Positions 11,758 to 39,514 of a stretch of 64,000 nucleotides of DNA are shown one piece after another. The DNA is from Takakia lepidozioides (taxonomy: Eukaryota; Plantae; Bryophyta), in the NCBI GenBank assembly GCA_030704615.1, contig CM060731.1, positions 85,932,001-85,996,000 of the forward strand, in the 5' to 3' direction. Numbering within the stretch: position 1 is the first letter of the stretch; the number at the start of each line of letters is the position of its first letter. Under the pieces are notes generated by a model that saw nothing but the letters and a program-made list of their open reading frames with translations, made no database searches and was not told the origin of the DNA. Both the position numbers and the translations under genes were made by a program.

Positions 11758-12990
11758 GCGGAAATGAGGTTTAGCATTTCCGTCCGGAGTGATACTTTCG
11801 ATTGCTGTTGGACGGAAATACGGCGCCGCATTTCCGTTTTGCATCTTAGTCATGCACCAGTGCGACGGAAAACCGACACCGAGTTTCCGTCCGGGGGAAA
11901 CCTTTATACTCTCCAGAACGGAGATGCGGTGCCGCATTTCCATCCAACAAGTACAGTATGTGACAGTGGAACGGAAATGCGGTACCGCTTTTCCGTTCTG
12001 CTTGAAAATCATGAACCACTGGAACTGAAATGCGGCACAACATTTCCGTCCGAGTCGCACTTTCCGACATTCCAGAACGGAAATGCGGCGCCGCATTTGC
12101 GTTTTGTATCTGAGGCATGGAGCTGAGGGACGGAAATGCGGCACCGCATTTCCGTCCGAGTCGCACCTTCCGACATTCCAGAACGGAAATGCGGCACCGC
12201 ATTTTCGTTCTGACTGAAAATCGTGAACCATCGGAACTGAAATGCGGCACCGCATTTCCATCCGAGTCGCACCTTCCGACATTCCAGAACGGAAATGCGG
12301 CACCGCATTTCCGTTCTGACTGAAAATCGTGAAACATCGGAACTGAAATGCGGTACCGCATTTCCGTCGGAGTCGCACCTTCCGACATTCCAGAACGGAA
12401 ATGCGGTGCCGCATTTCCGTTTTGTATGTGAGGCATGGAGCTGTGGGACGGAAATGCGGCACCGTATTTCCGTCCGGGTGAGACCTTCATACTCTCCAGA
12501 ACGGAAATGCGGCACGACATTTCCGTTCAACAACTAAGGTATGTGAACGTGGAACAGAAATGCGGTACCGCATTTCCGTTTTGATTGAAAATCATGAACC
12601 ACGGGAACTGAAATGCGGCACCGCATTTCCGTCCGAGTCGCATCTTCCGACATTCCAGAATGGAAATGCGGGGCCGCATTTCCCTTTTGTATCTCAAGCA
12701 TGGAGCTGTGGGACAGAAATGCGGTGCCGCAATTCCGTCCGTGTGAGACCTTCATACTCTCTAGAACGGAAATGCGGCACCACGTTTTCGTTCAACAACT
12801 AAGGTATGTGAAGGTGGAACGGAAATGCGGTGCCGCATTTTCGTCCAACAAGTACGGTATGTATAGCTTCGGGATGGTACTTAACGGAAATGCGGCGCCG
12901 CATTTGCTTTTTCACTCTAACTCATCAGACGCTAGGACGGAAATGCCATGATATGTGAACACGTGGACCAACGGAATTGCGGCACATGTC
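11758..12990. repeat. Palindrome array 1: ~21 copies of the 26-bp hairpin ACGGAAATGCGG-YR-CCGCATTTCCGT at a 53-bp period with 27-bp spacers, plus degenerate copies
   Basis: Starts at 11812, 11865, 11918, 11971 ... 12501 ... 12819 (steps of 53). A few spacer types recur, giving a higher-order repeat. Confidence 0.95.
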
Positions 12991-13343
12991 TGCACTCTAT
13001 GTGAGTGAAGTGGCAGGAGGCGGCGTGGCCTGACGGTTGGATAATGATGTTTGTTTTTCGGACGGCAGGCGTACCCTTGACGATTTGAATTTTGTAATGA
13101 CGCATAGTCCAGGAGGAGACACTTTCGTCCAAGCCTTTCGAACCCAAGTGGTGCATCACCGCCGTTTCATCTTCTTTTGTCGTGTCTACTCAATCACCCC
13201 TCTCGCGCCCTTTCCATCTGCACTCTTCTCCCCTTTTCCCTGTCTCTGTTCTTCTTATGCTTGAACCTGAGAGGGAGGGAGTGCGTGCACTAAAGAAGAG
13301 ACATCGTCGCAAGCTCCGAAAATTGTACTTCGGACGTAGGCCA

Positions 13344-16300
13344 ATGCCGAAGGGGAGGAAACAGATGCGTCTACAGGAGGAGATTGCCATCTCGAAGCAG
13401 CAGGCCACGCAGGCAACCCAGCCACCAGTGAGAGCTCCGTGCTATCGGGATTCGCGCAGCTGATCGAGCACAGAAACCCCCCTCATTTTTCTTCTGCAAT
13501 TCTTAGACTGTATGCTAGGAGACTTGAATGCAGAAGATGTTTGCATGCCTAACCGGAAAGGTGGACGTGCTGGAGGGATCACAAGAATCCGAAGAGCCGC
13601 AGGAAGAGTCCGTGGAGCTAGCTGCAGCACGCACACCCAGCCGATCCACGAGCACGGGTCTTCCTGCCGGGCCTAGCCCTGTGTGTTTCAAGGACGCGGC
13701 TTTGAAGGGCAAGTCTTTGCAGTTCAAAGCCCCAGAGAGCGACTCGCGTTTGAAGGTCATGGAGAATCGCCAGCAGGGGTCGGGCCCTTCTCCAGCAAAG
13801 ACGAAGAAGAAGTAGCCCGTCCTTCAACTTGTTTCTGAACCGGACCAGGCCGTTCCCCCCCCCTACCCAGGTGAATGAAGCATATTCAATTGCAGCAGAC
13901 ACCTTCACCTGCAAGAATGAGGAAGCACAAGGCAATCAGGGGGAGGGTGGAGCAGTCTCCCGCAAAACCGATTCCACAAGCTGAAGCCCAGTTCCTGCTT
14001 GATTTCCAGCCTGGTGATGTTGGGGGCGTCTCTGCTGCAGTGAAGGCAATGGGATCGACCGATTTTGTCGATTTGGTACCGGAGGAGGGTGTTGCCGCTC
14101 AACGTTCGCAGCAAGACCTGACCACCGTTGAGGAAGATCTTCAGAATACTGCAGGCCCGGAGGAGGCCTCTGCAATTGCCGAATTGCCCGCAAAGATTCC
14201 CCAGAGTGCAGCTCCAGTTGGGGATGCTCCAGCTACTCAGCCCCTACCGCCACCTGCAGAAATGTCTCCGGAAGAATTCCAAAGTGCAGCGGATACAATG
14301 TTGGAGGAGACACACAGTAGCATTGGCAGAGTTCTGGGCAGCAGGGTATTCTAGCGGACTCTTCGAATCCCACTCTGTCGCATGGTCTCCCTTCCCATTG
14401 TCAGGCAGGCACTTCCCGGAGATGTGGATAAGCTCAAGTTTGCATTTCGAGAAGGGTACCGTCTAGGTTCGCCAGCCTTCTACGTTTCCCTTGAGAATGA
14501 GGACGGCGAATCTCGTGGACCCACTGTGGATGAATTGTCAACCTGGGATACCCACTGGCACACTCGCAACGACAAATTCGAGGCAACGCTGAAGGGTGAT
14601 CCAGACTTTGGCCACATGTCGGATAAAATGTTCTTTGTGTGGGACGGGAATCACCGACTTCTTGCCTGGTGGGAGTACATCAAGCAGAACCATGCCAAGC
14701 ACATTGGCTGGCATTACATGGTGGAGTGTGTCATCCTCAAGGTGAAGGCGGCAGACTCCTCCCTGCTCAAGAATGCCATGGCGGACCTCGACTCGTAAGA
14801 TACTCATACCCTCCCAAGCACGTTCGAAATGCGGTGCCGTATTTCGGTTTCCAATCTGTTTTGTTTCCGTGCTTCCGTGGACTGAACTGGAGAGTGTGCC
14901 TTGCAGGGTCACTGAAAATGCGTACGTGCATACCCACATGGCACATATGCTATACAGGGTGAGGAAAACTGGTCTCACTGATCCGCACACGTTTGCGGAA
15001 ATGCTGGAGCCCGAGCTCATTCAGAAAGCTGTGGCAAAAATTGACCGGACATGGTATCGTCTCACTATAGATGGAATGGTGGAGGTGATATACGAAGTAA
15101 GTCGTCCTCCCATTTCCCTCTGCTCATCCTTCCCCAATTTTCAGTAATCTTTCCACATGAATCGAATGTAACGCTTCTGCATGTTTTTGTTGGCAGTCAA
15201 ACATCAAGCTGGATTTGGCCCATGCCAAACGCTTCTTCATGGAAAGTGAGGGGCAGGTCAAAACGTTGCAGTCATTGACTGAGCACTTGAAGGAAGCCGG
15301 GGTCAAGTCCAGAACGAAATACAAGTCAAAGCTTGTGAAGCTGGTGGCCATTGCAGATCCGGCACTTGGAAAGGACTTCATCCCCGAGATTGCAAAACAC
15401 TATTCTCGGGCCATGTAGCCGACCATGCAGTTGGAGAAACTGCATCACCTCTCAACGGCATGTGTTGAGGCGAAAGAGAAGGTGAGGTTTCAATGCACTG
15501 AAGTTCATTTCTAGCAATAGCCACTCTTCTTCCTGCTCCTGACATTGGATCGGAAATGGCAGACATGGTGGCTGTCGATCTGGAATGCATCGGAGAGTAT
15601 AAAGACAATGTGGTCTTTTCCACTTGAAGTTTCCGACCCTGCAGTGGATGTGTGGCTCAACCGCATGACTTGGTGGTTCCAGGTAATTCAAGGTACTTCC
15701 CCAGATTTGCTTTTCTGAAATGAATTCCCTGAACTGCTACGTGACAATGCATGTGGGAATCGCAGGTAGTGACGAATGCGAAGGAGCAAGTCGTAATGCA
15801 CACAAATTTGTTCGGCTTGTACGTCAAATGGGATGGAACACAGACACTGGAAGACTACGTGACACGTTTCAGATGTGCGTACAAGGACAACCTCTTCGCC
15901 CAAGAAGGAGCGTGGAGTTTACACATCAGGAGGGAGCGGGAAAAGCTGTAATGCAAATTGTTTACAGGTGAAGCCCAGCTGTCCTTCTATGCGAAGCCTG
16001 GTTATGAGGTTTGTCTGGGAAATGCGGCACCGCATTCGCATTTTATGTTTTCGGTTGCACTCTGCGAGTACGTTGCTCTCAACTTTTGCTCACGCATGCT
16101 GATTACCCTGCAGGAATATGAAATACGTGCTTCTTCAGACAGGGGCCCTGACTCAAGAGCCCCCGTTCTTCATGGCTTGGACCGTGGCGGGCCTAAGCTG
16201 TGTCTACACACCCGAGATGCAGAAACAATGGCATGCCGCGCATCTTGTTGGATGCCCGTGGTACCTGGACATGTCTGGCGGAATTGTTGACGAGTCTGAG

Positions 16301-16852
16301 AAAGATCAGCACGCAAAAGCAGAAGAGAAGAGAAAGGAAAGACGTGTCCCTACTGGGCCAGAGTCAGCAAAGGAAGCTGCTGCTCTGGAACAATCCAGAA
16401 AGGCAGTTGAGATGGCACAGCAGACGGTGGATGCAGCTGTGCAGGCTCAACATAAGGGGTCGAAGAAGAGGACTCACCAGCAAGGAGCAGCAGTTGTGAC
16501 ACCCAAGAAAACGAAGAAGCAAAAACAGATAGTGCAGGAAGAGGGTGACGAAGAGGGCTCCGATGGAGACTTTGCAACCAGCCCACCCCCCGAAACGCAG
16601 CCGAAATCCCCTGTGCCCACCGTTGTCACGAGAGGGACGAGAACAGGCTCGGCAAAGAAGGCACTCTTCAACCCCCCGGGGGGGCACCCTTTCGAGCTGG
16701 TGGAAATGAAGAGGCCGAAAGTGGATCCCGATACAGTAGTCCAGTGTGTAAATGAGAGTTTCTTGGCGGCTTTGGATGGACGGGCAGTCAAGTTGGCATA
16801 CATGAAGACCATGGAGGGTCTGAAGGGCAGAGCACTGAAGAAGGCGCACTAG
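13344..16852 (+). pseudogene. Multi-exon ParB/Srx-fold protein gene, paralog 1 (in-frame stops)
   Basis: Low-complexity N-terminus, then RIPLCRMVSLPIVR..D..KL...F..GY....FYVS...WD..W..FE...KMFFVWDGNHRLLAW. Several GT-AG introns. Stops at 14352 and 15416 interrupt otherwise continuous homology with paralog 2. Confidence 0.7.
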
Positions 16853-18400: not shown

Positions 18401-19768
18401 TCAGCTGGGCTCACTATCCGTATCCAAATAATCTTCCCCTTCACTACCCACATCTGCAATTTGCCTGGCGATAATTACCAACCCTGGAATGTCTTCCTCA
18501 TTAAAGGTAACTGCTCCTTCCAAAGAGACTGGTTCGGCCGTATCTGGTAGATTTTGTGATTCCCTCAGACCCTCGTGGTCGGCATTCTCCCCTAGGTCCA
18601 GATCATGGACGTCGGCAACGACTCGTTTGGCCCGAGGGTCCTTGTGAAGAACCACCTTCCATCCCGGCGCATGGATGTCATCTGAAAAGAAAACTTGCTC
18701 AACTTGCGATGGGAAGATGAATGGCTCTTCATCTTGTGGTAGCATTTTTCTGAAATCAGCAAGGAGGAACCCGTACTCATCCCGTTTCATGGTGGCATTC
18801 TCTCCTACCATATTGGCTTTTACCCAAGAACAACGGAATAGAATTGGCTTCACAAGACCATAGTCTAGTTTAAGGATCTCTTTGATCACTCCTACATATT
18901 GCACATGGCATGAAATTGGATTCCGATCTCGTGCACAGCTCCTACTCTCTTGTTCAAAAAATGATGCCACTCCGCTGTCATAAGTCACCAGGAGGCTGGT
19001 GTTGGCATCGTCCACTCTATAGTGATTGCCATATGCTTTCATTGACCGGTACAAAGTGGCAATCAGCCCTGGGGGGAATGACAGACTCACCATGCCCTCA
19101 TCTGGGTCCTCGTTCTCTGATGCGTACACTGCAATTGCAGATCTGACCCACACTGTAAAGGGCTGCAGCTCCTCCATTGTTGTCGGGTACTCCACCGGGG
19201 ATCAACGCCTACGACCGCCCCTCCGCCATGCTTTTGCAAATGCTCTCCGTTCCGTTTTCAGGCGGACCTTCTCCGCTGCGTATTTTCTGGCAGAAACCAA
19301 ATAGAAGCTGCAACTCAGTCCCCCTGACCAACACCGTACTGTACATGCATGCCACATGTAGAGTGTGTCCTTTCAAGCACATTGTAGTGATGCAGCCTAC
19401 TTCATGATCACTTGCAAGCAACAACACCAACTACGAAACACCCTCTGTTGTCGTCTGAAGCACCCTGTTAGTACACGATCCCACTCCCATAGTGGCCGGA
19501 ATGACTTGTGACAATATATATGTAATTCATGCATACAAAGACCATTAAGAATAGCACAGGAGGGATGTAAAGTTTACACCCACTGTCTCCATGGTGTCAT
19601 GGTTGTTGTGTTGTTCAGCACATAATCATGTGCCACATCCCGAAGGCGCGGGCTCATGGCACGCTTTGTTCCACCACCTTCTAGGACCTCGCCTACAACT
19701 CCTTCTTCCTCGTTCTCGTCCCACACCCGTCGTTGTATTGCATCAAATGAAGACATATACTCGGGCAC
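18401..19768 (-). CDS. CACTA TnpD C-terminal exons (DUF4218 end and DUF4216), opposite strand to copy 1
   Basis: EYMSSF..RRVWD..EE..GEVLEG..HDYVL, then YRSMKAYGNHYRV..YDSGV..YVGVIKEILKLDYG..LFRCSWV..DEYGF..EPFIFPSQVEQVFF..GWKVVL. Confidence 0.92.
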
Positions 19769-19769
19769 A

Positions 19770-20666
19770 GTTTATTTGGAAGAAGAAAGGAAGGATGTTC
19801 CTGGACAGGTTGACGAGACCATTGTCGTGCTAGGTAACGACGGAGGTTGCAGAATCGAATGGCACGTACCCCCATCAGACACCATCATGTACCGAGCTAT
19901 GGGAATGCCCATTCCCTTTCCAAATCAGTTGTTGCCCACACCATCCACAAAGGAGTTGGAAAACCGACAGGCGGCCACTGCCAACAGAGAGGTATGCAAC
20001 GATAATCATTCCCGACCTGGACCGTCAAGACCCTCCATAGCTTCTCGTGTGGAGGTATTCGACATTTCCGACGAGGAAGATGAGTGCATTGAGGTCCCCG
20101 TGTCCTCCACACGGTCGTTCAAATCCGACATGGACGTCTCTGCAGGTGCTACGCATGTACCCTCGAGCATAACTCCAACCCGGTCCATTGTGCAGCTCCT
20201 ACGGCAACATCACCTCGATGGTTCTCGCTCCGAACTGGCTGCTCTCGACTATGCCAAATTTCCAGTCAGGAAGGTAACGTATCTGCCTCCCAAAGTTGAT
20301 GGCAATGTCATCTTCGAGTTTCCACCTGTTACTTTGTCAAACAAAGCCTCAGGGATGTTAACAGATATGGATCGAAAGCATGACAGACACCCCTGGTGTG
20401 TGACGAAGACCAGTAGCACGGAAATTGCTAATGGTGTTCGTGTACGATACGTCCTCTGCGAGGGGAAGCTGAGATTCCTCAATCCCGCCTGCTTCCACTT
20501 TCTGTCCAAATGAGGGCGGAGAAACGAGACGGATTGGACTGGCACAACCCATCATCCATTCATTGTCTCCAGCCAAGCTCCTGCGGGTACTTTCAAGTGC
20601 GCACATTGCAAAGAACCACCGACGTGCATGTCAATGTGCAGAGCCAAGCAATATTACGTAATCCAT
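19770..20666 (+). pseudogene. GCM-like zinc-finger / MULE-type transposase, N-terminal fragment
   Basis: KVTYLPP..DGNVIFEFPP, KHDRHPWC..KTS, CEG....NPAC, CAHC...C...C. TGA at 20511 where the duplicate has GGA. 20035-20666 is duplicated at 24179-24810. Confidence 0.7.
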
Positions 20667-21270: not shown

Positions 21271-21279
21271 TATAAGCAG

Positions 21280-21699
21280 TAAAATACTCCACACCCACAC
21301 CAAGAGTTGCTCCAAAATATGCCACGTGTTGCCTTGACAAAAATACACGTGGTGCCCATACCGTTTGCCCAGATGTCGTCAAGCCATGGTGACAGGCTAT
21401 CGCATAATTTTCCCGTAGGTGTGGACAAGTCCACACCCTTTGTACGTCTAGAATCCACGTGGCGGTGTTTGCTAAAGCACACATCGCCCGTGGAAAAAAC
21501 CATTCACCCCGTGAAAAAAGCCACCTGTAGATTCAGCCACCCGTGGATTTTTCCACAGGGCCACCCGAGAGCTAGGCCGTCCACGGGGTGTCCGAAAGCA
21601 CTAGTCGTTTCTTACACCCACGACAGGTGTGGATTGCGGCTGATTCCACAGCAAAAAGTGTGGAAAAAGCTGTGGAAAAAGCCAGTTTCTCTTCTAGTG
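21280..21699 (+). mobile_element. CACTA family B terminus (TIR 21672-21699) with CCGTGG/CCACGG-type subterminal repeats
   Basis: Ends ...gtggaaaaagccagtttctcttcTAGTG (reverse complement CACTAGAAG...), followed by AAT. Confidence 0.85.
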
Positions 21700-22655
21700 A
21701 ATTCACCCTGAATAGGAAGCTCAAACAGTGTGCGTCAATGCACACTGTTTGAGCCCCCCCTTGTGCCTTGTTTTTTTGGTGTGGAAATGGTGCACATAGG
21801 GGCCTCTCTGTCTGGTTCAATCCACCCCTAATTCGAAGCTCAAACAGTGTGCGCCAACGCACACTGTTTGAGCCCCTCTTCTCATTGTTTTTTTCATAAT
21901 AAAATCGTCCAGACAGGGTAACTCTGTGAGGTTCAATCCACACTAACCTGGCAGCTCAAACAGTGTGCGTCAACGCACACTGTTTGAGCCCCCCTTGTAA
22001 TTGTTTCTTGAATGTGAAAATCGTGCACACAGTCGCCTCTCTCTAAGGTTCATTCCACCCTTTTTTGGAAGCTCAAACAGTGTGTGGCATTGCACACTGT
22101 TTGAGCCCACACTTGACATTATTTTTTCATTTTAGAATCGACCACAAAGGTCATCTCTGTCAAGTTCAATTCACACTTACCTGGCAGCCCAAACAGTGTG
22201 CGTCAACGCACACTGTTTGAGCCCCCTGATTTGCTTGTTTTTGTGCACCTAGGGCTAGTCTGGCAGGTCGAAATGGAAGCTCAAATAGTGTGCGGCAACG
22301 CACAGTGTTTGAGCCCCCTTGTCTGCTTGTTTTTTGTTGTGAAAATCAGGCACCTAGGGCCACTCTGGCAGGTTGAAACGAACCCTTTTTGGAAGCTCAA
22401 ACAGTGTGCGGCAACGCACACTGTTTGAGCCCCCTCTGCTTGTTTTTCTATGTGAAATTGGGCCAAACAGGGCCAATATGCATGCTCAAAACACCCATAG
22501 TTGGTAGGACGAAGAGTGTGCGGCAACACACACTGTTTGTGCCCCCTTTTGGGCCCCCTCTCTGCCTGTTTTTTTGTGGAAATGGGCCACATAGGACAAA
22601 ATACCACTATTTGGAAGCTGAAACATTGTGCGGCAATGCACAGTATTTTCGGCCC
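21700..22655. repeat. Palindrome array 2a: 36-bp hairpin GCTCAAACAGTGTGCG-N4-CGCACACTGTTTGAGC, ~116-bp period, 7 good plus 2 degenerate copies
   Basis: Starts at 21719, 21838, 21954, 22071, 22187, 22279, 22395. Confidence 0.95.
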
Positions 22656-22770
22656 CCACACTGCTTGTTTTCTGATGAGAAATTGGGCCACATAGGGCCT
22701 CTTTGCCATGCTCAAAACACCATCGTTTCATGCCTCTCTCTTATATCAATTTGAATGAACAACTCCGCAG

Positions 22771-24178
22771 GAGAAGATGCAAAGTGTGGCGGGTGAGATA
22801 CCTTCGGGGCAGGGGAAGGAGATCATTGTTGATGTGGACGATGAGTTCTATGAAAGCAAATCTGTTGAGATGTTGGGGGGTCAGAAGGTAAACTCTCAGC
22901 TTGTGGTGCAAAGTATGCTTGCCCCGGGTGGGAGGTTAAAGATTCCCCTATGTAGGTTGGTTTCCATGCCCGTCGTTCGTCCACCCCTCATCAAGGACAT
23001 CCTGAAGCTGGAGGCCGAGTTTGTTCATGGGTATGTGGATGGATCTGCAGTCTTTTACGTTTCTACAAAGGATTCCAGAGGCAATGAGCTCCTTGTGGAT
23101 GAGTCAATCGTGGACTCCTGGGATCCCATTTGGAGACAGGTGAACAAATCCTTCGAACTTCTTCTCTCTAGGAAACCTTCCACCGAGGCATTCTCAGGGA
23201 AGATGTTTCACGTTTGGGATGGCAACCACCGGTTGCTTGCATGGATGGCTGTCATTGGGAGGCTGCACTCACAGGAGGAAGAGTGGCATTACTCTGTTCG
23301 ATCAATGGTGCTGGATTGTGTCGGGAACATGATGGGTCTACTGACGGCAATGAATGATGTGAACAGGTTGGTTTCTCATTCTACATGTTCCACTTGTGGT
23401 TCCGTGGTTCTTTGGTTCCAGTCCTCTGTTGACGGTCCTTGCATTTCATTCTGACTTTCACACATCATTCTGCAGAGGGACGGAGACATTGCATGTCAAA
23501 ACGAGTCTGGTTCACACACTGTACAGGATACAAAGGATCGGGCAGATGCCCTTGACCAACTTCAAGACCATCCTTTCAGCAGAGACGTACAAGAAGTGCG
23601 AAAGCTCCAAGACAACAGAAACGTGGTACTCGTTGACCCGTGAGGTTTTCATGGAGTATATGTACGCGGTGAGATACATCTTCCAGCATCTGGCCTTTCG
23701 ATATTCCTGCTTCCACATGTTTGTTTCTGTTTGTTTCCCTTGCCCTTGGGTTGATGCAACTCTCGTGCATTCCCTTGCAGCAAGACATTGCAGATGCAGG
23801 AGAGCGTGACAAACTGGAATACTACAGCTCTACCCCTGAGGAGAGAAGGACAGCAAAGGGTGTTGAGAGTCACATCCAGAAAGAGATGACCACCACAAGA
23901 AGGACTATTATGAGTGCTTTTGTGAAACAACTGAGAATTGCAGACCCAACCTTCGGACCAGAGTTCTTTCAAGAGGTGAAAAACCATTACAACAAGCCAG
24001 GCAAGCCGGAGATGGCCCAGGAGTAGTTACACAGGTTGTCTACTGCCGTTGTGTCTTCAGAACAGAAGGTGAAGTGGCTACAGATATGGAACTCCGATCC
24101 CACTGTTAGGGATACCCACATGTTCCCCAGGCCGGAGAAAGAGAAGAAGACCCAGCGTGTCATTCCTGTCAGTGACAA
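22771..24178 (+). pseudogene. ParB/Srx-fold protein gene, paralog 2 (exons downstream of the array; truncated)
   Basis: KIPLCRLVSMPVVRP..KMFHVWDGNHRLLAW. Intron positions and downstream blocks (TWY.LT; IADP..G..F..E...HY; LH.LSTA.V...K) are shared with paralog 1. Acceptor ccgcag at 22769-70. Confidence 0.75.
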
Positions 24179-25595
24179 CCATAGCTTCTCGTGTGGAGGT
24201 ATTCGACATTTCCGACAAGGAAGATGATTGCATTGAGGTCCCCATGTCCTCCATACGGTTGTTCAAATCCGACATGGACGTCTCTGCAGGTGCTACGCAT
24301 GTACCCTTGAGCATAACTCCAACCCGGTCCATTGTGCAGCTCCTACGGCAACATCACCTCGATGGTTCTCTCTCCGAGCTGGCTGCTCTCAACTATGCCA
24401 AATTTCCAGTCAGGAAGGTAACGTATCCGCCTCCCGAAGTCGATGGCAATGTCATCTTCGAGTTTCCACCTGTTACTTTGTCAAACAAAGCCTCAGGGAT
24501 GTTAACAGACATGGATCAAAAGCATGACAGACACCCCTGGTGTGTGATGAAGACTAGTAGCACGAAAATTGCTAATGGTGTTCGTGTACGATACGTCCTC
24601 TGCGAGGGGAAGCTGAGATTCCTCAATCCCGCCTGCTTCCACTTTCTGTCCAAAGGAGGGCGGAGAAACGAGACGGATTGGACTGGCACAACCCATCATC
24701 CATTCATTGTCTTCAGCCAAGCTCATGCGGGTACTTTCAAGTGCGCACATTGCAAAGAACCACCGACGTGCATGTCCATGTGCAGAGCCAAGCAATATTA
24801 CGTAATCCATTTGCTCCCGGACTTGACTAGAGCTTGCATACACGTTGGGGTCCACTGCCACCCCTTGGCGAGAGGCAACATGCGGGAGGCTGTGCAGGAA
24901 GCACACAACATCATAAAAGAGGAGGTGAAATTGAGCCCCAGAGCCAGACCAAAGCAGATTCAGCTGAAGGCAGCCCACAAGATTGCTCTTGGCAAAATCA
25001 TGTCTAAAGATGATTCAGACCGAGTGCCCTTGAACAAAGAGGAGATGCTTGACCTGTTGGAGTCCGTCTCGCACGTTTGTAGTCTAAATGGGTGGAATCA
25101 CATCGTATCTTGCAAGCAGGAGTTCGGCCGAGGGTCGGACATGCACTCAATCCTGGAGGTGAAACGAAGGAGAGGATATGACTACAAACAAGGTAGCAGG
25201 TTTCCAGGGCAAGGCAGCGAATCCGATCGTTGTTACATTTTTAAAATATCGACGTGTGGGCCTGGGAGTGGAGTCGACTTGGTCACTCGCATGACAACTG
25301 GAAACTTGTCGAATGCTTGGGTGATGTTTGACCACATCAAGCAAATTACAAACCATCAGTGGGTGACTATGGGTGCGTATGTTTATGACTATCACTCCAA
25401 GAGGCTCATGATGATTGCAATCTGCGAGATGAAAGGGGAGGACACACAGTCGGAGATGCATCTGTGGGAGGGCATAAACGAGCAGATGGCAAGGGCGGGT
25501 TTGCCAGAGCCCAATTTCAGGGGATTCATGGCAGACAATGCTCAGGCCAACTGGGCAGCAGTGCGGCGTGTGTATGGTGAGGACCCCAATGTTCA
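24179..25595 (+). pseudogene. GCM-like zinc finger plus MULE-type DDE transposase core
   Basis: HDRHPWC, CAHC, RACIHVGVHCHP (GCM/WRKY-like H-x-H), then SRFPGQG, WVMFDHIK (D1) and FRGFMADNAQANW (D2). Ends abruptly at EDPNV. Confidence 0.75.
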
Positions 25596-26019
25596 TTCCA
25601 CATAAATGTGGAGCATACCACAGTTCACCATAGGTTGCTTGTGGTCAGTATCACGATCTAAACACAATTCCAAAGCATCACGGCAACAACCTGCTCATGA
25701 CATGAAGAACTGACTAAGCATGGCCAGAACAACAGATAGAATGAGCAGATGCAACGATAATTCAAAGTTACATAAGTGCTTCATTGCCCAAATACACTTC
25801 AGTCTGACATCAAAGAGTCTGAGTCTAAGTCTGAGGCAGAGGCCAGGCTGCACAATGCAGCCCAGCACAAAGGTTCAGCCTAAAGCTCCAAAAAACAACA
25901 TTTGTTTGTTTTCCAAGTTCCTGCATAAGATGCACCAACCAACATTGCATTGTGAGACACTCACTATACTCCAAAGCTATCAGGGAAGGTCACTGAGCAA
26001 CCTGCCAAGGCGGAAACAC

Positions 26020-27175
26020 CTGAGTCTGGACCCACACTATATCCCCGCTCCTTCAGCTATCCATGCCTCTGCACAAATCAAGCATACATCCTTGCCTTGC
26101 TGCTAGCAGCTGACGATGACAGCCTAGATTTATTCTAGGAAACACCCAGCTCAACTTATCACACTAGTTCCTATGCTCAATTGAATCTGCTACTCTCTAT
26201 AATCCAACAAGCATTCACCTTCTTGCCTCGATTGTCCCACCATTGACTGAGGTCAGAAAAGTATTCATTCCACAGCTTGTCCTCGTCTTTGTTACCTATT
26301 TTTGGATACTTTCCTGTTGTCACATCGGCAGTATCATGTCAAAGTCACTCCAAACTAGATTCACTCAACCAGCTAACTTGCAGATTCAACATAGAAAGTT
26401 AGGGCCGATTCTAATAAGAGGGAAATATAATGAAGAAGATGCTTTCATTAGCAGTGCCTGATTATATCAATTGTGCCGCTGCTGCCAGTTGACCATCTAC
26501 CCATGCAGGTTTCTGGTAGCTATTGATCCACAGGGAATCTTAGGTAATGTGGAGCTTGAAATCTGGCCCTCTTAGATGAATCTGGACCCACACTCTATCC
26601 CTGCTCCTTCAGCTATCCATGCCTTTGCACAAATCATGCATTCACCCTTTCCGTGCTGCTAGCAACTGACAATGAAAGCCTAGAATTGCTCTAGGAAACA
26701 CCCAACTCAACTTATCACACTAGTTCCTATGCTCAATTACATTTGCTACTCTCTGTAATCCAACAGGCATTTACCTTTTGCCTCGATTGTCCCACCATTG
26801 ACTGGGGTCAGAAAAGTATTCATTCCACAGCTCCTGGTCTCCTTGTCTCTGTTACTTGTTTATGGATACTTTCCTGTTGTCACATTGGCAATATTAGTCA
26901 GTCACTCCAAACTATCAAAGGTTTATCAACCAGCTAACTTGCAGAATTCAACATGAAAATTCAGGGCCGATTCTGATAAGAGGGAAAAACAGGGTGAAAT
27001 GTGTTGAAGAAGGTGCCTTCATTAGCAGTGCCTGAATTTATCAATTGTGTTGCTACTGCTGCAGCTTCCAGTTGACCATCTACCCATGCAGGTTGCTAGT
27101 AGTTATTCTATTGATTCACAGGGAATCATAAGTAATCTTGTGCCTGAAATCTGGCCACACTCTATCCCTTCGCTT
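26020..27175 (-). repeat. Two tandem ~560-bp copies of the PPR gene upstream/5' region (related sequence at ~28850-28965 and 29460-29820)
   Basis: tctggacccacact.tatccc.gctccttcagctatccatgcc at 26025 and 26581. gttgaccatctaccc recurs near 26488, 27071, 28859, 28949 and 29495. Confidence 0.8.
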
Positions 27176-27189
27176 CTTTTCGCCCACAC

Positions 27190-29500
27190 ATATGCAGCCA
27201 TCACAACCTCCAAACTGTCGCCCTTTGCCCATCATTTGCTCATAGGTATCCAAAGCCTCCATCCCGTGAATGTGCAGCCATCTTATCAAACAAACCTTTG
27301 CATCCTCAATGGACCCACATTTGGCATAAAAGTCCACGAGGGTATTGTTCAGAATCACATCTGGTACAATTCCAGCTTTGGCGATGTCACCATGCACCTC
27401 TTTGCCCTTTTCCAGGGCTGCTAGGCTTGCACAAGCATTGCAAACGCACACAAAACGTGATGTGGTTGCACTTCACCCCTTCCCCCATCAATTGCTCATA
27501 TGTCTCCAAGGCCTCCATCTCGCGCCCCTGCTGTGCATACCTTGCAAGCATCGTGTTCCACGACACCACATCTCGTTCAGCCATAGTGTTGAACAATCCC
27601 TTCGCATCCTCAATGCTCCCACATTTGGCATACTTGTCCACCAGGGCAGAGTTCAGAATGACATTGGATACAATTCCAGCTTTGATAATGTCACCATGGA
27701 CCTCTTTGCCCTTTTCCAGGGCTGCCAGGCTTGCAAACGCACACAAATGTGACATGGTTGGGCTTCACCCCTTCACAGATCATTTGCTCATAGGTTTCCA
27801 AAACCTCCATCCCGCCCCCTTGCTGTGCATATCCTGCAATCATCGCACTCCACAACACCACATCTCGTTCAGCCATATTGTCGAACACTCCCTTTGCATG
27901 ATCGATGCTCCCACATTTGGCATACATGCCCACCAGGGTATTGTTCAGGATCATATCTGGTACGATTCTAGCTCTGACGATGTCGCCATGCACCTCTATG
28001 CCCTTTTGCAAGGCTGTCAGGCTTGCACATGCACTGCAAACGCACACAAACGTTATGTGGTTGGGCTTCACCCCTTCCCCCATCATTTGCTAATAGGTCT
28101 CCAAAGCCTCCATCCCGCGCCCCTACTGTGCATATCCTGCGAGCATCGCACTCCACGACACCACATTTCGTTCAGCCATATTGTCGAACACTTCCTTTGC
28201 ACCCTTGATGCACCCACATTTGGCATACATGTCCACCAGGGCAGTATTCAGGATGACATCTGGTAGGATTCCAACTCTCATGATGTCACCATGCACCTCT
28301 TCGCCCTTTTCCAGGGCTGCCAGGCTTGCACATGCACTGCAAACGCTACAAACGTGATGTGGTTGGGCTTCACCGCTTCCCCCATCATTTGCTCATAGGT
28401 CTCCAAAGCATTCCTACCACACCCATGCTTGGTAAATCGTGCCAACATGATATTCCACGTGATCAAAGATCGTTGAGGCATTCTGTTAAACACTTGGTGA
28501 GCATCCATGATGCTCCCGCACTTAACATACATGTTGACAAGGGTGTGGAGGAGAAAAACATTTGGCGTGAATCCACTTTGGATAATGTGAGTGTGCACCT
28601 GCTTTCCAACTTCCAGGCCTTTCACCTTGATGCACTTATGCAAGAGACAGACATGTGTTTCTGAATCTGCTGAAATGCCTCTTTGGTTTAAAGTCTGTAG
28701 AGCCTCTTTCAGTTTGCGTGCCTCACAAGGCATCTTCACATGCCCAAAAGTGCCAGAAGAGGCATTGTGGACTCCCTCTCTTGATCCTCTTCCAGAAACT
28801 GTGGTCTTGGTTGAGGTGCTTGATTTTATCAACTGTGACGTTGCAGCTGCTGCCTTTAGTTGACCATCTACCCATGCAGGTTTCTTGTAGCTATTGATCC
28901 TAGCTGGTGCCTTGTTCTATCAATGTGTTGCTGCTGCTGTTGTTTCCAGTTGACCATCTACCCACTTGTAGCCGCTGTGCTATTGAAGAAGGTGCCCCCT
29001 TTCCCCCATTTTCCAGAGGTCCCAGGCTTGCACACGCTTTTGCAAACACAAACACCCACGCGTGGTAAATCCTTCCAGCATTGTATTCCATGAGATCAAA
29101 GTTTGTTGAGGCATTATGTTGAAAACTTGGTGAGCATTCATGATGGTCTCGCACTTAACATACAGGTTGACAAGGGTGTTGAGGAGAAAAACAGTTGGCG
29201 TGAGTCCACTTTGGATCAAAATGTGAGTGTGCACCTGCTTCCAACTTCCAGACCTTTCCTCTTGATGCACTTAAGCAAGAGACAGACATACTTATCTAAA
29301 TTTGCTGAAATTCCTCATTAGTTTAAAGTCTGTAGAGCCTCATTCAGTCTGCCTGCCTCACAACGCATCTTGACATGCCCAGAAGTGCTAGAACAGGCAT
29401 TATGGACTCCCTCTCTTGATCCTCTTCCAGAAGTTGGGGTCATGGTTGAGGTGCCTGATTTGATCATTTGTGCCGTTGCTGCCGCGGCTTCCAATTGACC
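27190..29500 (-). pseudogene. Degenerate PLS-class PPR genes: ~300-bp P-L-S triplets in tandem plus a duplicated N-terminus
   Basis: Repeated GVKPNHITFVCVC.ACASL.AL.KG.EVHGDI...GIVPD.ILN..LV..YAKCGSI.DAK.VF..MAERDVV.W..M..GYAQ.G. Frameshifts throughout; no E/DYW domain. Confidence 0.92.
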
Positions 29501-31029
29501 ATCTACCCATGCAGGTTTCTTGTAGCTATCCTTCCACAGGGAATCATAGGTGATCTAGAGCTTGAAATCTGGCCCGCTTCGATGAATCTCAACCCACACT
29601 CTATCCCTGCTCCTTCATTCCAGAGCTTCTCTTAGTTTCTGTTATCTATTTTCAATACTTTCCTGTTGCCACATAGGCAGTAACATGTCAAATCACTTCA
29701 AAACCCCTGGTACCATAGATCCACCAAGAGCTAACTTGCAGAATTCAACATGAAAATTAGGGACAAATTCTGATAACAAGGAAAACAGGCTGAAATGTAT
29801 TGAAGAAGGTGCCTCCGTTACCGCTGCCTAGTTCTATCAACTGAGTCTGATGGGAGGGAAAAACAGGCTGAAATAGGTCAAAGAAGAAGGTGCCCTCACC
29901 ACATTGTCCTCGACCTTGTGTCATGACCCATTTTTGACTGACCATGAACCTAAGAGAACCTCTTGTGTGTGCTGCTTGTGTCTGTAGTCAGGTAATGTCT
30001 GATTGGTCTATGAGAACCACCACGGTGCAGCTGTGCGGGCAGAAATTGAAGCACGGCCTGCTGAGACCAAGCTGACTCTTCCAAGAACCTTGTAAACATC
30101 AGGAAGGATACCAAAGCACGGTACTAACAGGAGCCAAGAGCCCACATTTGCACGATGGACAAACTTCTTCACATCGTACATTAAGAAAAAGCCACACCTT
30201 GCAATTGCGGTTGTCCCACCATCGTGAAGGATCTTTAAAAACTCATGCCAGCTCTGCTCCGTGCTGCAAATTCAAGGCTGAGTTTGATGAGAGCGCAAAA
30301 CAGGCTGAAATAGGTCGAAGAAGAAGGTGCCCTCACCACATTGTCCTTGACCTAAGACCAAGCTGACTCTCCCCAGAACGGCGAGCTCTCAGCCGACACC
30401 TAGTCCTCGCACACATACCCTAGCGTTTGTCGGGTTGCTTGCTTTTCAAATGCAAAGGTTGCTCCAACTGCGGGCCTCCCATGTTTGCCCTCCCTCCCGC
30501 TCGCTGCTCTAAGTCCCAGCCCTCTCTCTCTCCCTCCCGCTCGCTCGCTCTAAGTCCCAACCCTCTGTTCACAGCTACCGGGATGGGCAACTTAAAAAAA
30601 AAAAAAAACCTTTTGCAAACCCTACAAGCAACTTTTGCAAAAAAATTTAAACCTTTTGCACTTTGATCTTTAAACCTTTTGCACTCTGCAACAAGTTTTA
30701 AAGGTACCATATACTAGCTCTACCCTGTTTTCATTTTACAATGTTGAATGATTTATATTTATGTCCCTGCACTGATATGGCCACACTTAATTTGACTCCC
30801 TTCAATCATAATATGAGGACTGTTAAGCTTGCATTGCATTCGGTTTACATTGCAAAGTGCGACGACCACCTCTTCGTCTTTCCGAGGGCAGATTTCTGAA
30901 GTTCATGATTTATTCCATTTGCAGCGGAGTACTAACTAAACCCATACACCACAATCAATGGAAATAATTGTATGGTCCCATTTCACACAGGTGTGTAACA
31001 TGCCATGTAAACTAAGCCAACCCCTGCCA

Positions 31030-31209
31030 TGGTCATGGCTGTTTTCACACCGTTCTTGCCTGGGGTGTGGACCACATGTGAGACACCCCACAATTAGGGC
31101 ATATTTAGACCCACACCTTGGCTCAGTCTACAGACCCGTGATAAAAGCCGTGGAATGTGCCAGGTGTGAGATGGCATACCCGTGGAAAAAGCCGGTTTCT
31201 GTTCTAGTG
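31030..31209 (-). mobile_element. CACTA family B second terminus (TIR 31182-31209)
   Basis: gtggaaaaagccggtttctgttcTAGTG is 26/28 identical to the 21672-21699 TIR and is followed by ATT (reverse complement AAT). Confidence 0.85.
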
Positions 31210-32150
31210 ATTGAACCTGCCAGAGTGGCCCTATGTGGCCGTTTTGAACATGAAAAAACAAGCAAAATGGGGGGCTCAAACAGTGTGCGGTGCCGCACAC
31301 TGTTTGAGCTTCCAATTCGGGGTGGATTGAACCTGCCTAAGTGGCCCTATGTGGCCGATTTTCACATGAAAAAAACAATGACAAGGTGGGCTCAAACAGT
31401 GTGCGTTGACGCACACTGTTTGAGCTGCCAGGTAAGTGTGCATTGAACCTGCAAGACTGGCCCTATGTGGCCGATTTTCACATGAAAAAAACAATGACAA
31501 GGTGGGCTCAAACAGTGTGCAATGAAGCACGCTGTTTGAGCTGCTAGGTAAGTGTGCATTGAACCTCAACGAGATGCCCTATGTGGCCGATTTTCAAATG
31601 AAAAAAACATTGACAAGGTGGGCTCAAATAGTGTGCGTTGAAGCACACTATTTGAGCTGCTAGGTAAGTGTGCATTGAACCTCAAAGAGATGCCCTATGT
31701 GGCCGATTTTCAAATGAAAAAAACAATGACAAGGTGGGCTTAAACAGTGTGCGTTGACGCACACTGCTGGAGCTGCCAGGAAATTGTTGATTGAACCTCA
31801 TAGAGATACCCCGTCTGGACGATTTTATTATGAAAAAAGCAGTGAGAAGGGGGGCTCGAACAGTGTGCGTTGGCGCACACTGTTTGAGCTTCGAATTAGG
31901 GGTGGATTGAACCAGATAGAGAGGCCCCTGTGTGCACCATTTCCACACCCAAAAACAAGGCACAAGGGGGGCTCAAACAGTGTGCGTTGACGTACACTGT
32001 TTGAGCTTCCAATTCGGGGTGGATTGAACCTGCCATAGTGGCCCTATGTGGCCGTTTTGCACATCAAAAAACAAGCAAAATGGGGGGCTCAAACAGTGTG
32101 TGTTGCCGCACACTGTTTGAGCTTCCAATTTGGGGTGGATTCAACCTGCC
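31210..32150. repeat. Palindrome array 2b: the same 36-bp hairpin, 8 copies at 116-117-bp period, spacers reverse-complemented relative to 2a
   Basis: Starts at 31274, 31390, 31506, 31622, 31738, 31854, 31971, 32087. Confidence 0.95.
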
Positions 32151-32243
32151 AGAGATGCCGTGTATAGGCGGTTTTCATTTCAAAATACAAGCACAACGTT
32201 CACATCACCAATGAAGCACAAAGGTCGGTCTCAAACATTGTAC

Positions 32244-32695
32244 CTTTTTTTTAGTTGCTCCAGAAGACTCCCCAATCGCCGGAGACCCTTTGCGCTTTGG
32301 ACTGCTCTCTACACCGAGCATGTTCTGGAGCATCTCCCCCATCCTCTTTTCCACTATCTGGTTCTTCCTGAGGCTAGCATCAATATCATCTTCGGCGTCC
32401 GTCTCTCCCTCGGATTCAGTCTCCTCCTCACCTGTTCTTGGAAGTATGGTGGGCTGCTGTTCTTCTCCAGATTCCTGCTCTTCCATCACCAGACTTTCCT
32501 CTTTGCCCTTTTCTTCCTCCTTTTCCTCTTCGTCTACTCTTTCCATCCTCATTCTATATCTGGCGCTATTCCTGTCCCTAGTGCTCGTGAAGTATAACGA
32601 CTTCCTTCTCTTCCTCCTCTGGTGGAAACAAGGGCTCCCCACGCTGCCTCTGGAGCTCTCCAGTTTGACGTTTGTAACAAGCGTTGCTATGGCAT
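32244..32695 (-). pseudogene. Acidic/low-complexity exon, probable displaced first exon of ParB paralog 2
   Basis: E/K-rich ORF ending GATKKK|GTAC (phase-0 donor at 32242-43). Begins ATG CCA TAG CAA CGC TTG, resembling the paralog-1 start MPKGRKQMRL. Degenerate. Confidence 0.55.
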
Positions 32696-39050: not shown

Positions 39051-39109
39051 CTCCCTTAGCAGCTGTACTGCCTGCGGTGCTGCAATTGTTTGCTTCTGCA
39101 GAATCGTGG

Positions 39110-39505: not shown

Positions 39506-39514
39506 CTTGAACGT

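What the first reader, a model, noticed from the sequence alone, without database searches (positions are those of the whole stretch)
11758..32695. Two ParB-fold genes, each paired with its own phased palindrome array: a candidate parS/ParB-like module on plant transposons
Seen: two diverged paralogs with the ParB/Srx DGxHR signature (VWDGNHRLLAW) and shared intron positions. Paralog 1 (13344-16852) starts ~350 bp after a ~21-copy array of a 26-bp palindrome. Paralog 2 is attached to a ~17-copy array of a different, 36-bp palindrome. The arrays share no obvious motif with each other or with the subterminal repeats beside the three real CACTA termini, and array 1 has no adjacent CACTA end. Known: bacterial ParB CTPases load on clustered palindromic parS sites near their gene, and ParB-fold domains also act as nucleases or nucleotide sensors. 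Inference: these are cognate protein/site pairs that co-diverged, giving a TE-encoded loading, spreading or chromatin-protection system. No HTH was recognised, so direct binding is unproven.
Basis: partly seen in the sequence, partly recalled or inferred. Interest (0 to 1): 0.9.

Follow-up and report, generated by a model that had tools for sequence, protein, structure and literature searches.

The report
Transposon ParB-like genes with palindrome arrays
Two diverged copies of a transposon-borne gene with a genuine bacterial-type ParB fold each sit beside their own evenly spaced row of palindromes, probably the protein's binding sites; the design has been reported in algal transposons, both copies here lie in rearranged elements, and binding is untested.

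Summary
Array 1 has 20 copies of a 26-bp palindrome in strict 53-bp register. Array 2 has 15-17 copies of a 36-bp palindrome in 116-bp register. Two DGNHR exons (40-43% identical) lie downstream and share two intron positions.

The exon folds as a ParB/Srx N-domain (pLDDT 93). In a search of 48,161 PDB chains, the 12 best matches were ParB-superfamily proteins, by my reading of the entry titles.

- Array 2 is two inverted blocks 9.5 kb apart. One CACTA insertion (TSD AAT) split it, and rejoining restores the 116-bp register exactly.
- The two palindromes share an inner core (10 of 12 bases).
- No methyltransferase-like part was found in either copy.
- Paralog 2 is truncated, and paralog 1 lies in an inverted segment of a CACTA element.

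Palindromes are far better conserved than spacers (0.86 vs 0.43; 0.91 vs 0.61). All seven fetched Riccia loci hold recurring locus-specific palindromes near the gene, and six also have a Mutator-like transposase.

So cognate site/protein pairs are plausible, but binding is untested. ParB-like accessory genes with inverted-repeat arrays are published for algal transposons (2025). This scan has already noted the module many times elsewhere in this genome. I rate it a new member of a known kind.

The parts
11758..12960 (.). Array 1: about 21 units of a 26-bp palindrome (ACGGAAATGCGG-YR-CCGCATTTCCGT) in exact 53-bp register, with about five unrelated spacer classes
13344..16852 (+). I verified these exons: ParB exon 14361-14792, next exon 14907-15096, and one at about 15230-15413. 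The later exons are not verified, and no methyltransferase-like part was found up to 18450
14361..14792 (+). ParB/Srx-fold exon of paralog 1 (VWDGNHRLLAW). It keeps all 11 residues that are nearly invariant in the family
21700..22720 (+). Array 2a: 7 good and 2 degenerate units of the 36-bp palindrome in 116-bp register, directly upstream of paralog 2. It starts with the AAT target-site duplication
31210..32200 (-). Array 2b: 8 units of the same 116-bp repeat, inverted relative to 2a. It starts with ATT, the reverse complement of the AAT duplication. Joining 2b to 2a restores an 80-bp spacer, that is the exact 116-bp register
22771..24128 (+). Paralog 2 gene, truncated. ParB exon runs to 23364, the next exon is 23476-23668, and further exons run to about 24128. 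Family homology stops near 24130-24180, where a 632-bp duplicated transposase piece begins
21672..21699 (-). CACTA terminus (CACTAGAAGAGAAACTGGCTTTTTCCAC) with subterminal GGCTTTTTCCAC-type repeats at 21490-21683. The element body lies to the left
31182..31209 (-). Second terminus of the same CACTA family, read as the other end of the same insertion, now inverted
32205..32642 (-). ORF 'U': an acidic and lysine-rich ORF ending in AAG|GTACAA beside array 2b. It may be the displaced 5' exon of paralog 2, since its phase fits the acceptor CAG|GAG at 22770/22771. No sequence similarity supports this
8630..11346 (+). N-terminal two thirds of a CACTA (TnpD-type) transposase: Transpos_assoc, Transposase_21 and DUF4218
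18401..19762 (-). The complementary C-terminal part of a CACTA transposase, including DUF4216, on the opposite strand. It starts about 25-30 residues after the point where the + strand part stops. This implies that about 11.3-19.8 kb, holding array 1 and paralog 1, is inverted
24157..25605 (+). Mutator-like transposase ORF, 32-35% identical to the gene that sits divergently upstream of the ParB-family gene in six Riccia loci. A 96.7% identical 632-bp piece is at 20035-20666
33352..34761 (+). Second Mutator-like transposase ORF. After the array is rejoined it lies divergent to U and paralog 2, as in Riccia
62981..63892 (-). Methyltransferase-like exons of a third family copy that runs off the window. 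By my reading it has a motif IV-like ILDIPDG and a motif I-like VVDLSVSTG

Best explanation
These are two old, diverged copies of an accessory module that DNA transposons of non-seed plants carry. The module is a spliced gene plus, within about 0.1-1.5 kb of its 5' end, a phased array of a copy-specific palindrome.

The gene's conserved exon encodes a true ParB/Srx N-domain, closest to the nucleotide-binding N-domains of ParB, KorB and Noc. A helical region follows it. Complete relatives also carry a degenerate N6A/N4C methyltransferase-like tail.

Most likely mechanism (inferred):
- Dimers of the protein recognise the palindromes of their own element through the helical region or the methyltransferase-like part.
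- The ParB N-domain mediates nucleotide-dependent self-association.
- All sites lie on one face of the helix (53 bp is about 5 turns, 116 bp about 11 turns), so a large nucleoprotein complex forms on the element.
- That complex controls the element's own promoter or chromatin, in the manner of KorB at its operators or TnpA at En/Spm subterminal repeats.

Specificity changes in the outer arms of the palindrome, while an inner TGCG-N4-CGCA core is kept.

Shown: the fold, the arrays, their conservation, the linkage, and the homologues. Inferred: binding, nucleotide use, and the biological role.

In this window the copies are relics. A CACTA element carrying paralog 1 inserted into the array of paralog 2. 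Inversions followed, and paralog 2 lost its 3' half.
For: FOLD.
- The AF2 model of the paralog-2 exon has pLDDT 93 and pTM 0.87.
- Foldseek's top 46 rows are all ParB, Noc, KorB, Srx, SerK, SbnI, PadC and similar chains.
- VIA gives Z 9.1 (rmsd 2.1 over 93 residues) to ParB 7bm8, 8.9 to M. xanthus ParB, 8.6 to 6sdk, 8.5 to Noc and 8.1 to KorB. Sulfiredoxin scores only 5.4-6.8.
- Against 48,161 representative chains only 14 reach Z 2. By my reading of the entry titles the best 12 are ParB-superfamily.
- The Atlas shape search finds ParB_N/HTH_ParB clusters at TM 0.54-0.62.

FAMILY. 815 representatives reach E<=1e-3. Annotated members occur in Riccia sorocarpa and Adiantum.

SITES.
- Palindrome columns are 0.855 identical against 0.428 for spacers in array 1, and 0.908 against 0.60-0.62 in array 2.
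- The 53-bp register has no indel across 20 units, although there are five spacer classes.

LINKAGE.
- All seven Riccia loci hold recurring locus-specific palindromes near the gene. Five have a tight cluster 0.4-1.6 kb upstream of its start. In L002 the sites lie beyond the transposase gene and downstream. In L004 they are scattered.
- In six of the seven loci the neighbour is a homologue of the window's Mutator-like ORF.
- Array 1 stays with paralog 1 inside a CACTA context whose own subterminal repeats are different.

HELICAL REGION. The model of Riccia P0078:165-560 aligns with KorB over 204 residues spanning the N-domain and DNA-binding domain (Z 9.3, rmsd 6.3).

LITERATURE. The same idea has been put forward for algal transposons.
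Against: - No binding, nucleotide or expression data exist.
- There is no Pfam or PDB sequence match, even with a family profile.
- The motif is DGNHR, not the GERRxR of CTPase ParBs, so CTP use is open.
- The HTH-like alignment has a large rmsd and adds little Z over the N-domain alone.
- In Riccia the arrays sit equally close to the transposase gene, and sometimes on both outer sides (L002), like ordinary subterminal repeats.
- A 12-kb metagenome contig with a relative (L008) has no array.
- Neither window copy has a detectable methyltransferase-like part.
Confidence: 0.55

Rival explanations
1. The palindrome arrays are ordinary transposon subterminal or internal repeats. They would be bound by the transposase (for example through the zinc-finger part of the Mutator-like protein) or by another element factor. 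The ParB-like gene would simply lie next to them.
For: In six of seven Riccia loci a Mutator-like transposase gene lies within about 2 kb upstream of the ParB-family gene. In five loci the palindrome cluster lies between that neighbour and the gene. In L002, L001, L006 and L007 further palindromes flank the gene pair, like subterminal repeats. Transposase and ParB gene are co-inherited there, so co-variation cannot separate them.
Against: Array 1 accompanies paralog 1 next to a CACTA transposase, with no Mutator-like gene beside it. It differs from that CACTA's own subterminal GGCTTTTTCCAC repeats. Neither array is terminal in this window. Algal Plavaka families, with a different transposase, also show tandem inverted repeats next to their ParB-like gene.
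Confidence: 0.17
2. The arrays act in cis without a dedicated element protein. They could be a promoter or enhancer, an insulator, a cruciform or hairpin-forming structure, a small-RNA source, or a recombination-prone satellite.
For: The arrays lie just upstream of promoter-like, pyrimidine-rich leaders, or possibly inside a 5' intron. Short palindromes can form hairpins.
Against: The 12-16-nt arms are short for small-RNA precursors. Strict helical phasing and five-fold better conservation of palindrome over spacer fit protein sites. A different palindrome with each diverged gene copy, in two plant lineages, argues for a co-evolving partner.
Confidence: 0.12
3. The ParB/Srx domain works as an enzyme, such as a nuclease or an ATP-dependent kinase or reductase-like activity, as in other DGxHR or Srx-type members. 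It would not be a DNA clamp, and the arrays would not be its loading sites.
For: The motif is DGNHR, not GERRxR. Serine kinase, sulfiredoxin, SbnI and Osa also appear among the structural matches.
Against: The best matches by Z and rmsd are the DNA-binding ParB, KorB and Noc N-domains. The two-domain model aligns in order with KorB and Noc. The gene is persistently linked with palindrome arrays.
Confidence: 0.1

Closest known systems
ParB-like accessory proteins of algal giant transposons: PAG3 of Plavaka elements in Bostrychia (10.1101/2025.02.11.637652; Curr Biol 2025), the ParB-like plus methyltransferase protein of Sola1-1 in Ectocarpus (PMC12477816), and the earlier survey by Iyer et al. 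2011 that the Ectocarpus paper cites for green algae
   Same: An N-terminal ParB-like domain in a gene carried by a DNA transposon, with tandem arrays of inverted repeats next to the gene. The hypothesis that the protein binds and perhaps modifies its own element is also the same.
   Different: The host is a land plant. The carriers are CACTA and Mutator-like elements. Relatives have a degenerate methyltransferase-like tail (PF01555 below threshold) rather than a 2OG oxygenase. The two copies here have no detectable tail. I did not test sequence homology to the algal proteins.
Bacterial ParB-parS, Noc-NBS and KorB-OB systems
   Same: The N-domain fold (Z 8-9), a G-x-x-R type motif, and clustered palindromic sites close to the gene. 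KorB also acts at promoters.
   Different: There is no Pfam ParB_N match. The motif is DGNHR instead of GERRxR. The HTH is unproven. No ParA partner was seen. There are 15-21 evenly phased sites rather than a few. The host is a eukaryotic nucleus and the gene has introns.
En/Spm (CACTA) TnpA and its 12-bp subterminal motifs (own knowledge)
   Same: An element-encoded accessory DNA-binding protein with many inverted sites on its own element, and roles in element regulation and anti-silencing.
   Different: No sequence or fold relationship was found, since Pfam gives no TnpA-type hit. The arrays here are internal, not subterminal.
Phage and plasmid ParB-domain plus N6A/N4C methyltransferase fusions (own knowledge)
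   Same: The domain order of the complete plant relatives: ParB-like, then helical, then a beta-class methyltransferase-like part.
   Different: The plant motif IV is degenerate (for example DLPTG or DIPDG by my reading), so catalysis is doubtful. The plant genes are spliced and transposon-borne.

Membership tests
ParB/Srx fold superfamily (ParB N-terminal domain) | The mixed alpha/beta N-domain fold | tested here: met
   pLDDT 93 model. Z 9.1 with rmsd 2.1 over 93 residues to 7bm8. The top 12 of 48,161 chains are superfamily members by my reading of the titles.
ParB/Srx fold superfamily (ParB N-terminal domain) | A conserved phosphate-binding G-x-x-R motif | tested here: met
   DGNHR is present in both copies. 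G, N and H are nearly invariant in 63 family sequences.
ParB/Srx fold superfamily (ParB N-terminal domain) | Sequence membership in Pfam ParB_N (PF02195) or a detectable match to a solved ParB | tested here: not met
   No Pfam hit at E<=0.1 for the exons or for full-length homologues. A family profile against PDB sequences gave only a spurious eL24 hit.
Canonical ParABS partition ParB (CTPase clamp) | GERRxR (box II) and ENLQR-type (box III) CTP motifs | tested here: not met
   Box II reads DGNHRLLAW. The following helix reads AMNDVN or AMADLD (AMHNLN in Riccia). This is by inspection, and the canonical motifs are from my own knowledge.
Canonical ParABS partition ParB (CTPase clamp) | A helix-turn-helix DNA-binding domain after the N-domain | tested here: inconclusive
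   The helical region of Riccia P0078 aligns in order with KorB (204 residues, rmsd 6.3, Z 9.3) and Noc (203 residues). Z is barely above that of the N-domain alone.
Canonical ParABS partition ParB (CTPase clamp) | Clustered palindromic parS sites near the gene | tested here: met
Canonical ParABS partition ParB (CTPase clamp) | A partner ParA ATPase; CTP binding and hydrolysis | not tested
   No ParA-type hit came up among the ORFs I scanned, but the window was not searched exhaustively. The biochemistry cannot be tested here.
Transposon-borne ParB-like accessory module (algal PAG3 / ParB-methyltransferase type) | A ParB-like N-domain gene carried with a DDE transposase in a DNA transposon | tested here: met
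   CACTA transposase parts flank paralog 1. Mutator-like ORFs flank paralog 2 and six of the seven Riccia homologues.
Transposon-borne ParB-like accessory module (algal PAG3 / ParB-methyltransferase type) | [quoted passage not shown] | tested here: met
Transposon-borne ParB-like accessory module (algal PAG3 / ParB-methyltransferase type) | A C-terminal DNA- or chromatin-modifying domain (methyltransferase or 2OG oxygenase) | tested here: not met
   None was found after paralog 1 (to 18450) or paralog 2. Riccia relatives have a sub-threshold PF01555 match to the motif I region only. A third copy at 62981-63892 has methyltransferase-like exons.
En/Spm TnpA-type accessory protein | Sequence homology to TnpA-type families | tested here: not met
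   No Pfam family at all was found for the paralog exons.

The most novel reading that the evidence does not exclude
These genes would encode nucleotide-gated ParB-type DNA clamps that work in a eukaryotic nucleus. They would load on transposon-borne parS-like arrays. Their site specificity would evolve in the outer palindrome arms, so that competing transposon lineages each recognise only themselves, as in plasmid incompatibility groups. The resulting complex would shield the element from silencing or help it transpose or segregate.
Probability: 0.25. Interest if true: 0.85.

Novelty: new member of a known kind. Interest (0 to 1): 0.55.

Why it matters
If the protein binds its own array, plant transposons carry a portable self-recognition system of bacterial ancestry. 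This window offers a compact test set: two protein and site pairs that share an inner core but differ in the outer arms. That would bear on how transposons regulate themselves or evade host silencing. It could also provide orthogonal DNA-binding and site pairs as tools. As it stands, the value is comparative. It extends a module described in algae to land plants. It also shows that the array follows the ParB-like gene across two transposase superfamilies.

Tried and rejected
BLANK OR UNINFORMATIVE SEARCHES
- Pfam on all exons and on full-length homologues gave nothing for the ParB part.
- A family profile against PDB sequences gave only a chance eL24 match.
- An HMM of 20 long Riccia proteins against six-frame ORFs of the window found only the two ParB exons and the methyltransferase-like exon at 63.5 kb.
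- Permissive tblastn for a methyltransferase-like part after paralog 1 gave only noise.
- ORF U was compared with the N-terminal ORFs of paralog 1 and with all fetched proteins. Nothing was significant, so U as an exon of paralog 2 rests only on position, strand and splice phase.
- Atlas feature search of the Riccia middle region scored 0.80, which is chance level.
- The search for CACTA transposase homologues returned almost only exon-sized fragments. A second CACTA copy in the window (41-42.7 kb) served as the reference for mapping the split instead.
- Metagenome scans: none for the array-1 palindrome. The array-2 core gave one unrelated 70% GC bacterial palindrome.
- The closest public relatives are at most 50% identical.

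DATA NOT AVAILABLE
- DNA for the Adiantum loci and for the closest ENA contig could not be fetched.
No reads were laid, and I did not try another route.

STEP LEFT OUT
- Exons were searched and folded singly, by reference. The joined spliced protein was not built, searched or folded.

REJECTED IDEA
- Two independent CACTA insertions at the same array position. I rejected this because no array continues on the far side of either terminus.


Full report
OBSERVATION

Array 1. Tandem Repeats Finder and pattern searches confirm it. The pattern ACGGAAATGCGG-NN-CCGCATTTCCGT matches 20 times (up to 3 mismatches) between 11812 and 12909. None is expected by chance and there are no matches elsewhere in the window. 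Nineteen consecutive start-to-start distances are exactly 53 bp.

Array 2. The pattern GCTCAAACAGTGTGCG-N4-CGCACACTGTTTGAGC matches 15 times, again with none expected by chance. Seven matches lie at 21719-22430, followed by two degenerate units. Eight lie at 31274-32122. The register is 116 bp.

The genes. A six-frame scan finds DG.HR only twice. Both hits are on the + strand, in VWDGNHRLLAW, at 14643 and 23218. The two exons (14361-14792 and 22936-23364) are 40-43% identical. Two further short exons are weakly alike.

Intron positions. Two are shared in place and phase.
- After the ParB exon: TC|gtaaga and AG|gttggt, both phase 2, with acceptors ttgcag|G and ctgcag|A.
- After the next exon: GAA|gtaagt and GCG|gtgaga, both phase 0.

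- The two blocks are inverted relative to each other and lie 9.5 kb apart.
- Each block is abutted by a terminus CACTAGAA[G/C]AGAAAC[T/C]GGCTTTTTCCAC, at 21699 and at 31209. Both are on the minus strand and are the only two in the window.
- The flanks read AAT (21700-21702) and ATT (31210-31212).
- Counting the triplet once, the spacer across the joint is 61 + 3 + 16 = 80 bp. That is exactly 116 minus 36.
- So one CACTA insertion with a 3-bp duplication split a single array of about 2 kb and 17 units. A later rearrangement inverted one part.
- I rejected two independent insertions, because no array continues on the far side of either terminus.
I checked it on the sequence.

THE PALINDROMES SHARE A CORE

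The inner 12-mers are TGCGG-CA-CCGCA (array 1) and TGCGT-CA-ACGCA (array 2, with TGCGG-CA-ACGCA variants). They agree at 10 of 12 positions. This comparison is post hoc and counts as moderate evidence of common descent of the sites.

ARE THE PALINDROMES FUNCTIONAL UNITS?

- In array 1 the 26 palindrome columns have mean pairwise identity 0.855 against 0.428 for the 27 spacer columns.
- The spacers fall into about five unrelated classes, yet no indel disturbs the 53-bp register.
- Of all 53 cyclic windows, the palindrome window is the best conserved.
- In array 2 the values are 0.908 against 0.60-0.62.
- 53 bp and 116 bp are close to 5 and 11 helical turns, which would put all sites on one face of the helix. 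This last point is inference.

THE FOLD

Sequence methods are blank. There is no Pfam family for the exons or for full-length relatives. A 63-sequence profile against PDB sequences gives only a chance match.

Structure is clear.
- AlphaFold2 on the paralog-2 exon (residues from window 22927-23364, 63-row alignment A2) gives pLDDT 93.1 and pTM 0.87.
- Foldseek's first 46 rows are all Noc, ParB, KorB, sulfiredoxin, serine kinase, SbnI, PadC and similar chains, with E from 0.013 upward.
- VIA-align gives Z 9.1 (rmsd 2.1 Å, 93 residues, 19% identity) to Caulobacter ParB residues 42-136. It gives 8.9 to M. xanthus ParB, 8.6 to 6sdk, 8.5 to Noc and 8.1 to KorB. Sulfiredoxin scores 5.4-6.8.
- The search of 48,161 representative chains that does not depend on Foldseek is the stricter test. 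Only 14 chains reach Z 2. By my reading of the entry titles, the best 12 all belong to the ParB/Srx superfamily: KorB, PadC, serine kinase, sulfiredoxin, Atu1540, pNOB8 ParB-N, SbnI, SspE, Spo0J, BrxU and Osa.
- The ESM Atlas shape search returns ParB_N/HTH_ParB clusters at TM 0.54-0.62.

The domain is therefore a ParB/Srx N-domain nearest to the DNA-binding branch. Its motif is DGNHR rather than GERRxR, so CTP use is open.

THE FAMILY

- A profile of the two exons finds 815 cluster representatives at E<=1e-3 and 40 at E<=1e-30. Most are exon-sized calls from metagenomes.
- Annotated members occur in the liverwort Riccia sorocarpa and the ferns Adiantum nelumboides and A. capillus-veneris.
- Riccia alone has 44 proteins at 40-96% identity to P0078.
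- Complete members (for example P0153, 1207 aa) have the order ParB-like, long helical region, methyltransferase-like tail.
- The tail matches Pfam N6_N4_Mtase only below threshold (13-26 bits against a cut-off of 26.7) and only over the motif I region. By my reading, motif IV is degenerate, for example DLPTG.

The window copies.
- Paralog 2 follows the family to about residue 497 of P0164, near 24128. A 632-bp piece that is 96.7% identical to 20035-20666 then starts at 24179. Paralog 2 is therefore truncated.
- For paralog 1, no methyltransferase-like exon was found up to 18450.
- A third copy at 62981-63892 on the minus strand has methyltransferase-like exons and runs off the window.

IS THERE A DNA-BINDING DOMAIN?

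I could not join exons, so I folded a natural relative, Riccia P0078:165-560, with a 50-row alignment. The model has pLDDT 85 and pTM 0.73, with the N-domain followed by an all-helical region. VIA aligns it in order with KorB over 204 of 209 residues (Z 9.3, rmsd 6.3). It also aligns with Noc over 203 residues (Z 8.3). The N-domain alone already gives Z 8.3. [quoted passage not shown]

COMPARATIVE LINKAGE

I fetched seven Riccia loci.
- All seven hold recurring palindromes of a locus-specific sequence near the gene.
- Five have a tight cluster 0.4-1.6 kb upstream of the gene start. Examples are ATTCCGGCGAG-N-CTCGCCGGAAT (L001), TCCGGCGGA-N-TCCGCCGGA (L003), GCCGGCGGG-N-CCCGCCGGC (L005) and TGCCGGCGG-N3-CCGCCGGCA (L006, L007).
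- L001, L006 and L007 have a second type, CCAGCGG-N3-CCGCTGG, downstream.
- In L002 the sites lie beyond the transposase gene and downstream of the ParB-family gene.
- In L004 the sites are scattered, including positions inside the gene span.
- In six of the seven loci the divergent upstream neighbour is a homologue of the window ORF 24157-25605 (32-35% identity, E 1e-28 to 1e-65). It is also a weaker homologue of ORF 33352-34761.
- That ORF's nearest named Atlas clusters are MULE/ZSWIM families, at 0.78-0.85, which is only a lead.
- After array 2 is rejoined, the order is Mutator-like ORF (33352-34761), ORF U, array, paralog 2. This reproduces the Riccia layout.
- ORF U (32205-32642, minus strand) ends in AAG|GTACAA. 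Its phase fits the acceptor CAG|GAG at 22770/22771, so the array may lie in a 5' intron. No similarity supports this, and I treat it as inference.

CONTEXT OF PARALOG 1

- A CACTA transposase (Transpos_assoc, Transposase_21, DUF4218) runs on the + strand from 8630 and stops after the residues ERYMK at about 11.28 kb.
- I used a second CACTA copy in the window (41-42.7 kb, minus strand) as a ruler. The next part of the protein, and then DUF4216, lies on the minus strand from 19762 down to 18401.
- The two parts are complementary to within about 25-30 residues.
- The simplest reading is that about 11.3-19.8 kb, which holds array 1 and paralog 1, is inverted inside a CACTA element whose right end is the terminus at 21699.
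- If so, a CACTA element carrying its own ParB-like gene and array inserted into the array of another copy of the module.
- The CACTA subterminal repeats (GGCTTTTTCCAC type, 21490-21683) are unrelated to the array-1 palindrome.
- Array 1 is therefore neither a terminus nor the CACTA's own repeat. It accompanies the ParB-like gene in a context without a Mutator-like transposase.
- This is the best evidence in the window against the idea that the palindromes belong to the transposase. In Riccia the two genes are co-inherited, so that rival cannot be excluded there.

WHAT IS KNOWN

- The Bostrychia genome paper describes a Plavaka accessory protein (PAG3) with an N-terminal ParB-like domain. [quoted passage not shown] It suggests the protein binds and modifies its own transposon.
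- The Ectocarpus paper reports a 1104-aa ParB-like plus methyltransferase protein in a Sola1 element. [quoted passage not shown] 2011; Petroll et al. 2025).
- A full-text search for ParB together with transposon and bryophyte, liverwort, fern or moss listed no paper that mentions ParB among the 15 shown. I take that as 'not found', not as proof of absence.
- Notes of this scan report the same module at many other places in this genome. I treated them as leads and re-tested what I use.

VERDICT

Cognate protein and site pairs are the best-supported reading (confidence about 0.55) but are untested. The kind of system is already published for algae, so this is a new land-plant member of a known kind. 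Both copies here are relics in a nest of rearranged transposons.

LIMITS

- No expression data could be obtained.
- The joined spliced proteins were not built or searched.
- The host species was not identified.
- The left ends of the elements and the exact inversion breakpoints were not located.

Noticed in passing
window 3895-3997 and 7691-7793: A 103-nt inverted repeat, 93% complementary and 3.7 kb apart, with a second inverted pair at 4575-4695 and 7182-7301. It looks like the terminal inverted repeats of a separate small element just upstream of the CACTA transposase gene.
   Followed up: no
window 41001-42753 (minus strand): A second CACTA transposase copy (Transposase_21 to DUF4218 region, 43-47% identical to Riccia P0275). 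I used it as a ruler to map the split of the first copy.
   Followed up: partly
window 27100-29530 (minus strand): Fragments of a PLS-type pentatricopeptide-repeat gene with frameshifts, appearing as a 303-bp tandem repeat. They lie between paralog 2 and the inverted CACTA end, and could be a captured or decayed host gene.
   Followed up: no
window 20035-20666 and 24179-24810: A 632-bp direct duplication, 96.7% identical, of the 5' part of the Mutator-like transposase ORF. One copy lies inside the CACTA body and the other directly after the truncated paralog 2. Its origin is unexplained.
   Followed up: partly
window 43100-43686 and 44803-45389: Two 587-bp direct repeats, 99.7% identical and 1.7 kb apart. 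They could be the LTRs of a short or internally deleted retroelement.
   Followed up: no
window 39059-39589 (minus strand): An ORF that looks like a retrotransposon integrase core, by eye only.
   Followed up: no
window 1009-2136 (minus strand): An ORF with an NLI-interacting-factor-like phosphatase domain (Pfam NIF, E 7.6e-13).
   Followed up: no
window 35272-35446: About 17 tandem copies of a 10-bp unit, CTGTGTCAGG.
   Followed up: no
Riccia loci L006 and L007: Two copies of one element family, 97% identical over more than 10 kb. A 3.5-kb block carrying the downstream palindrome array is inverted between them, so inversions around these arrays also occur in Riccia.
   Followed up: partly
Riccia protein P0178 (765 aa): In this annotated protein, residues 33-129 resemble the zinc-finger part of the Mutator-like transposase, and the ParB-family region follows. 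This is either a real fusion or a merged gene model.
   Followed up: no
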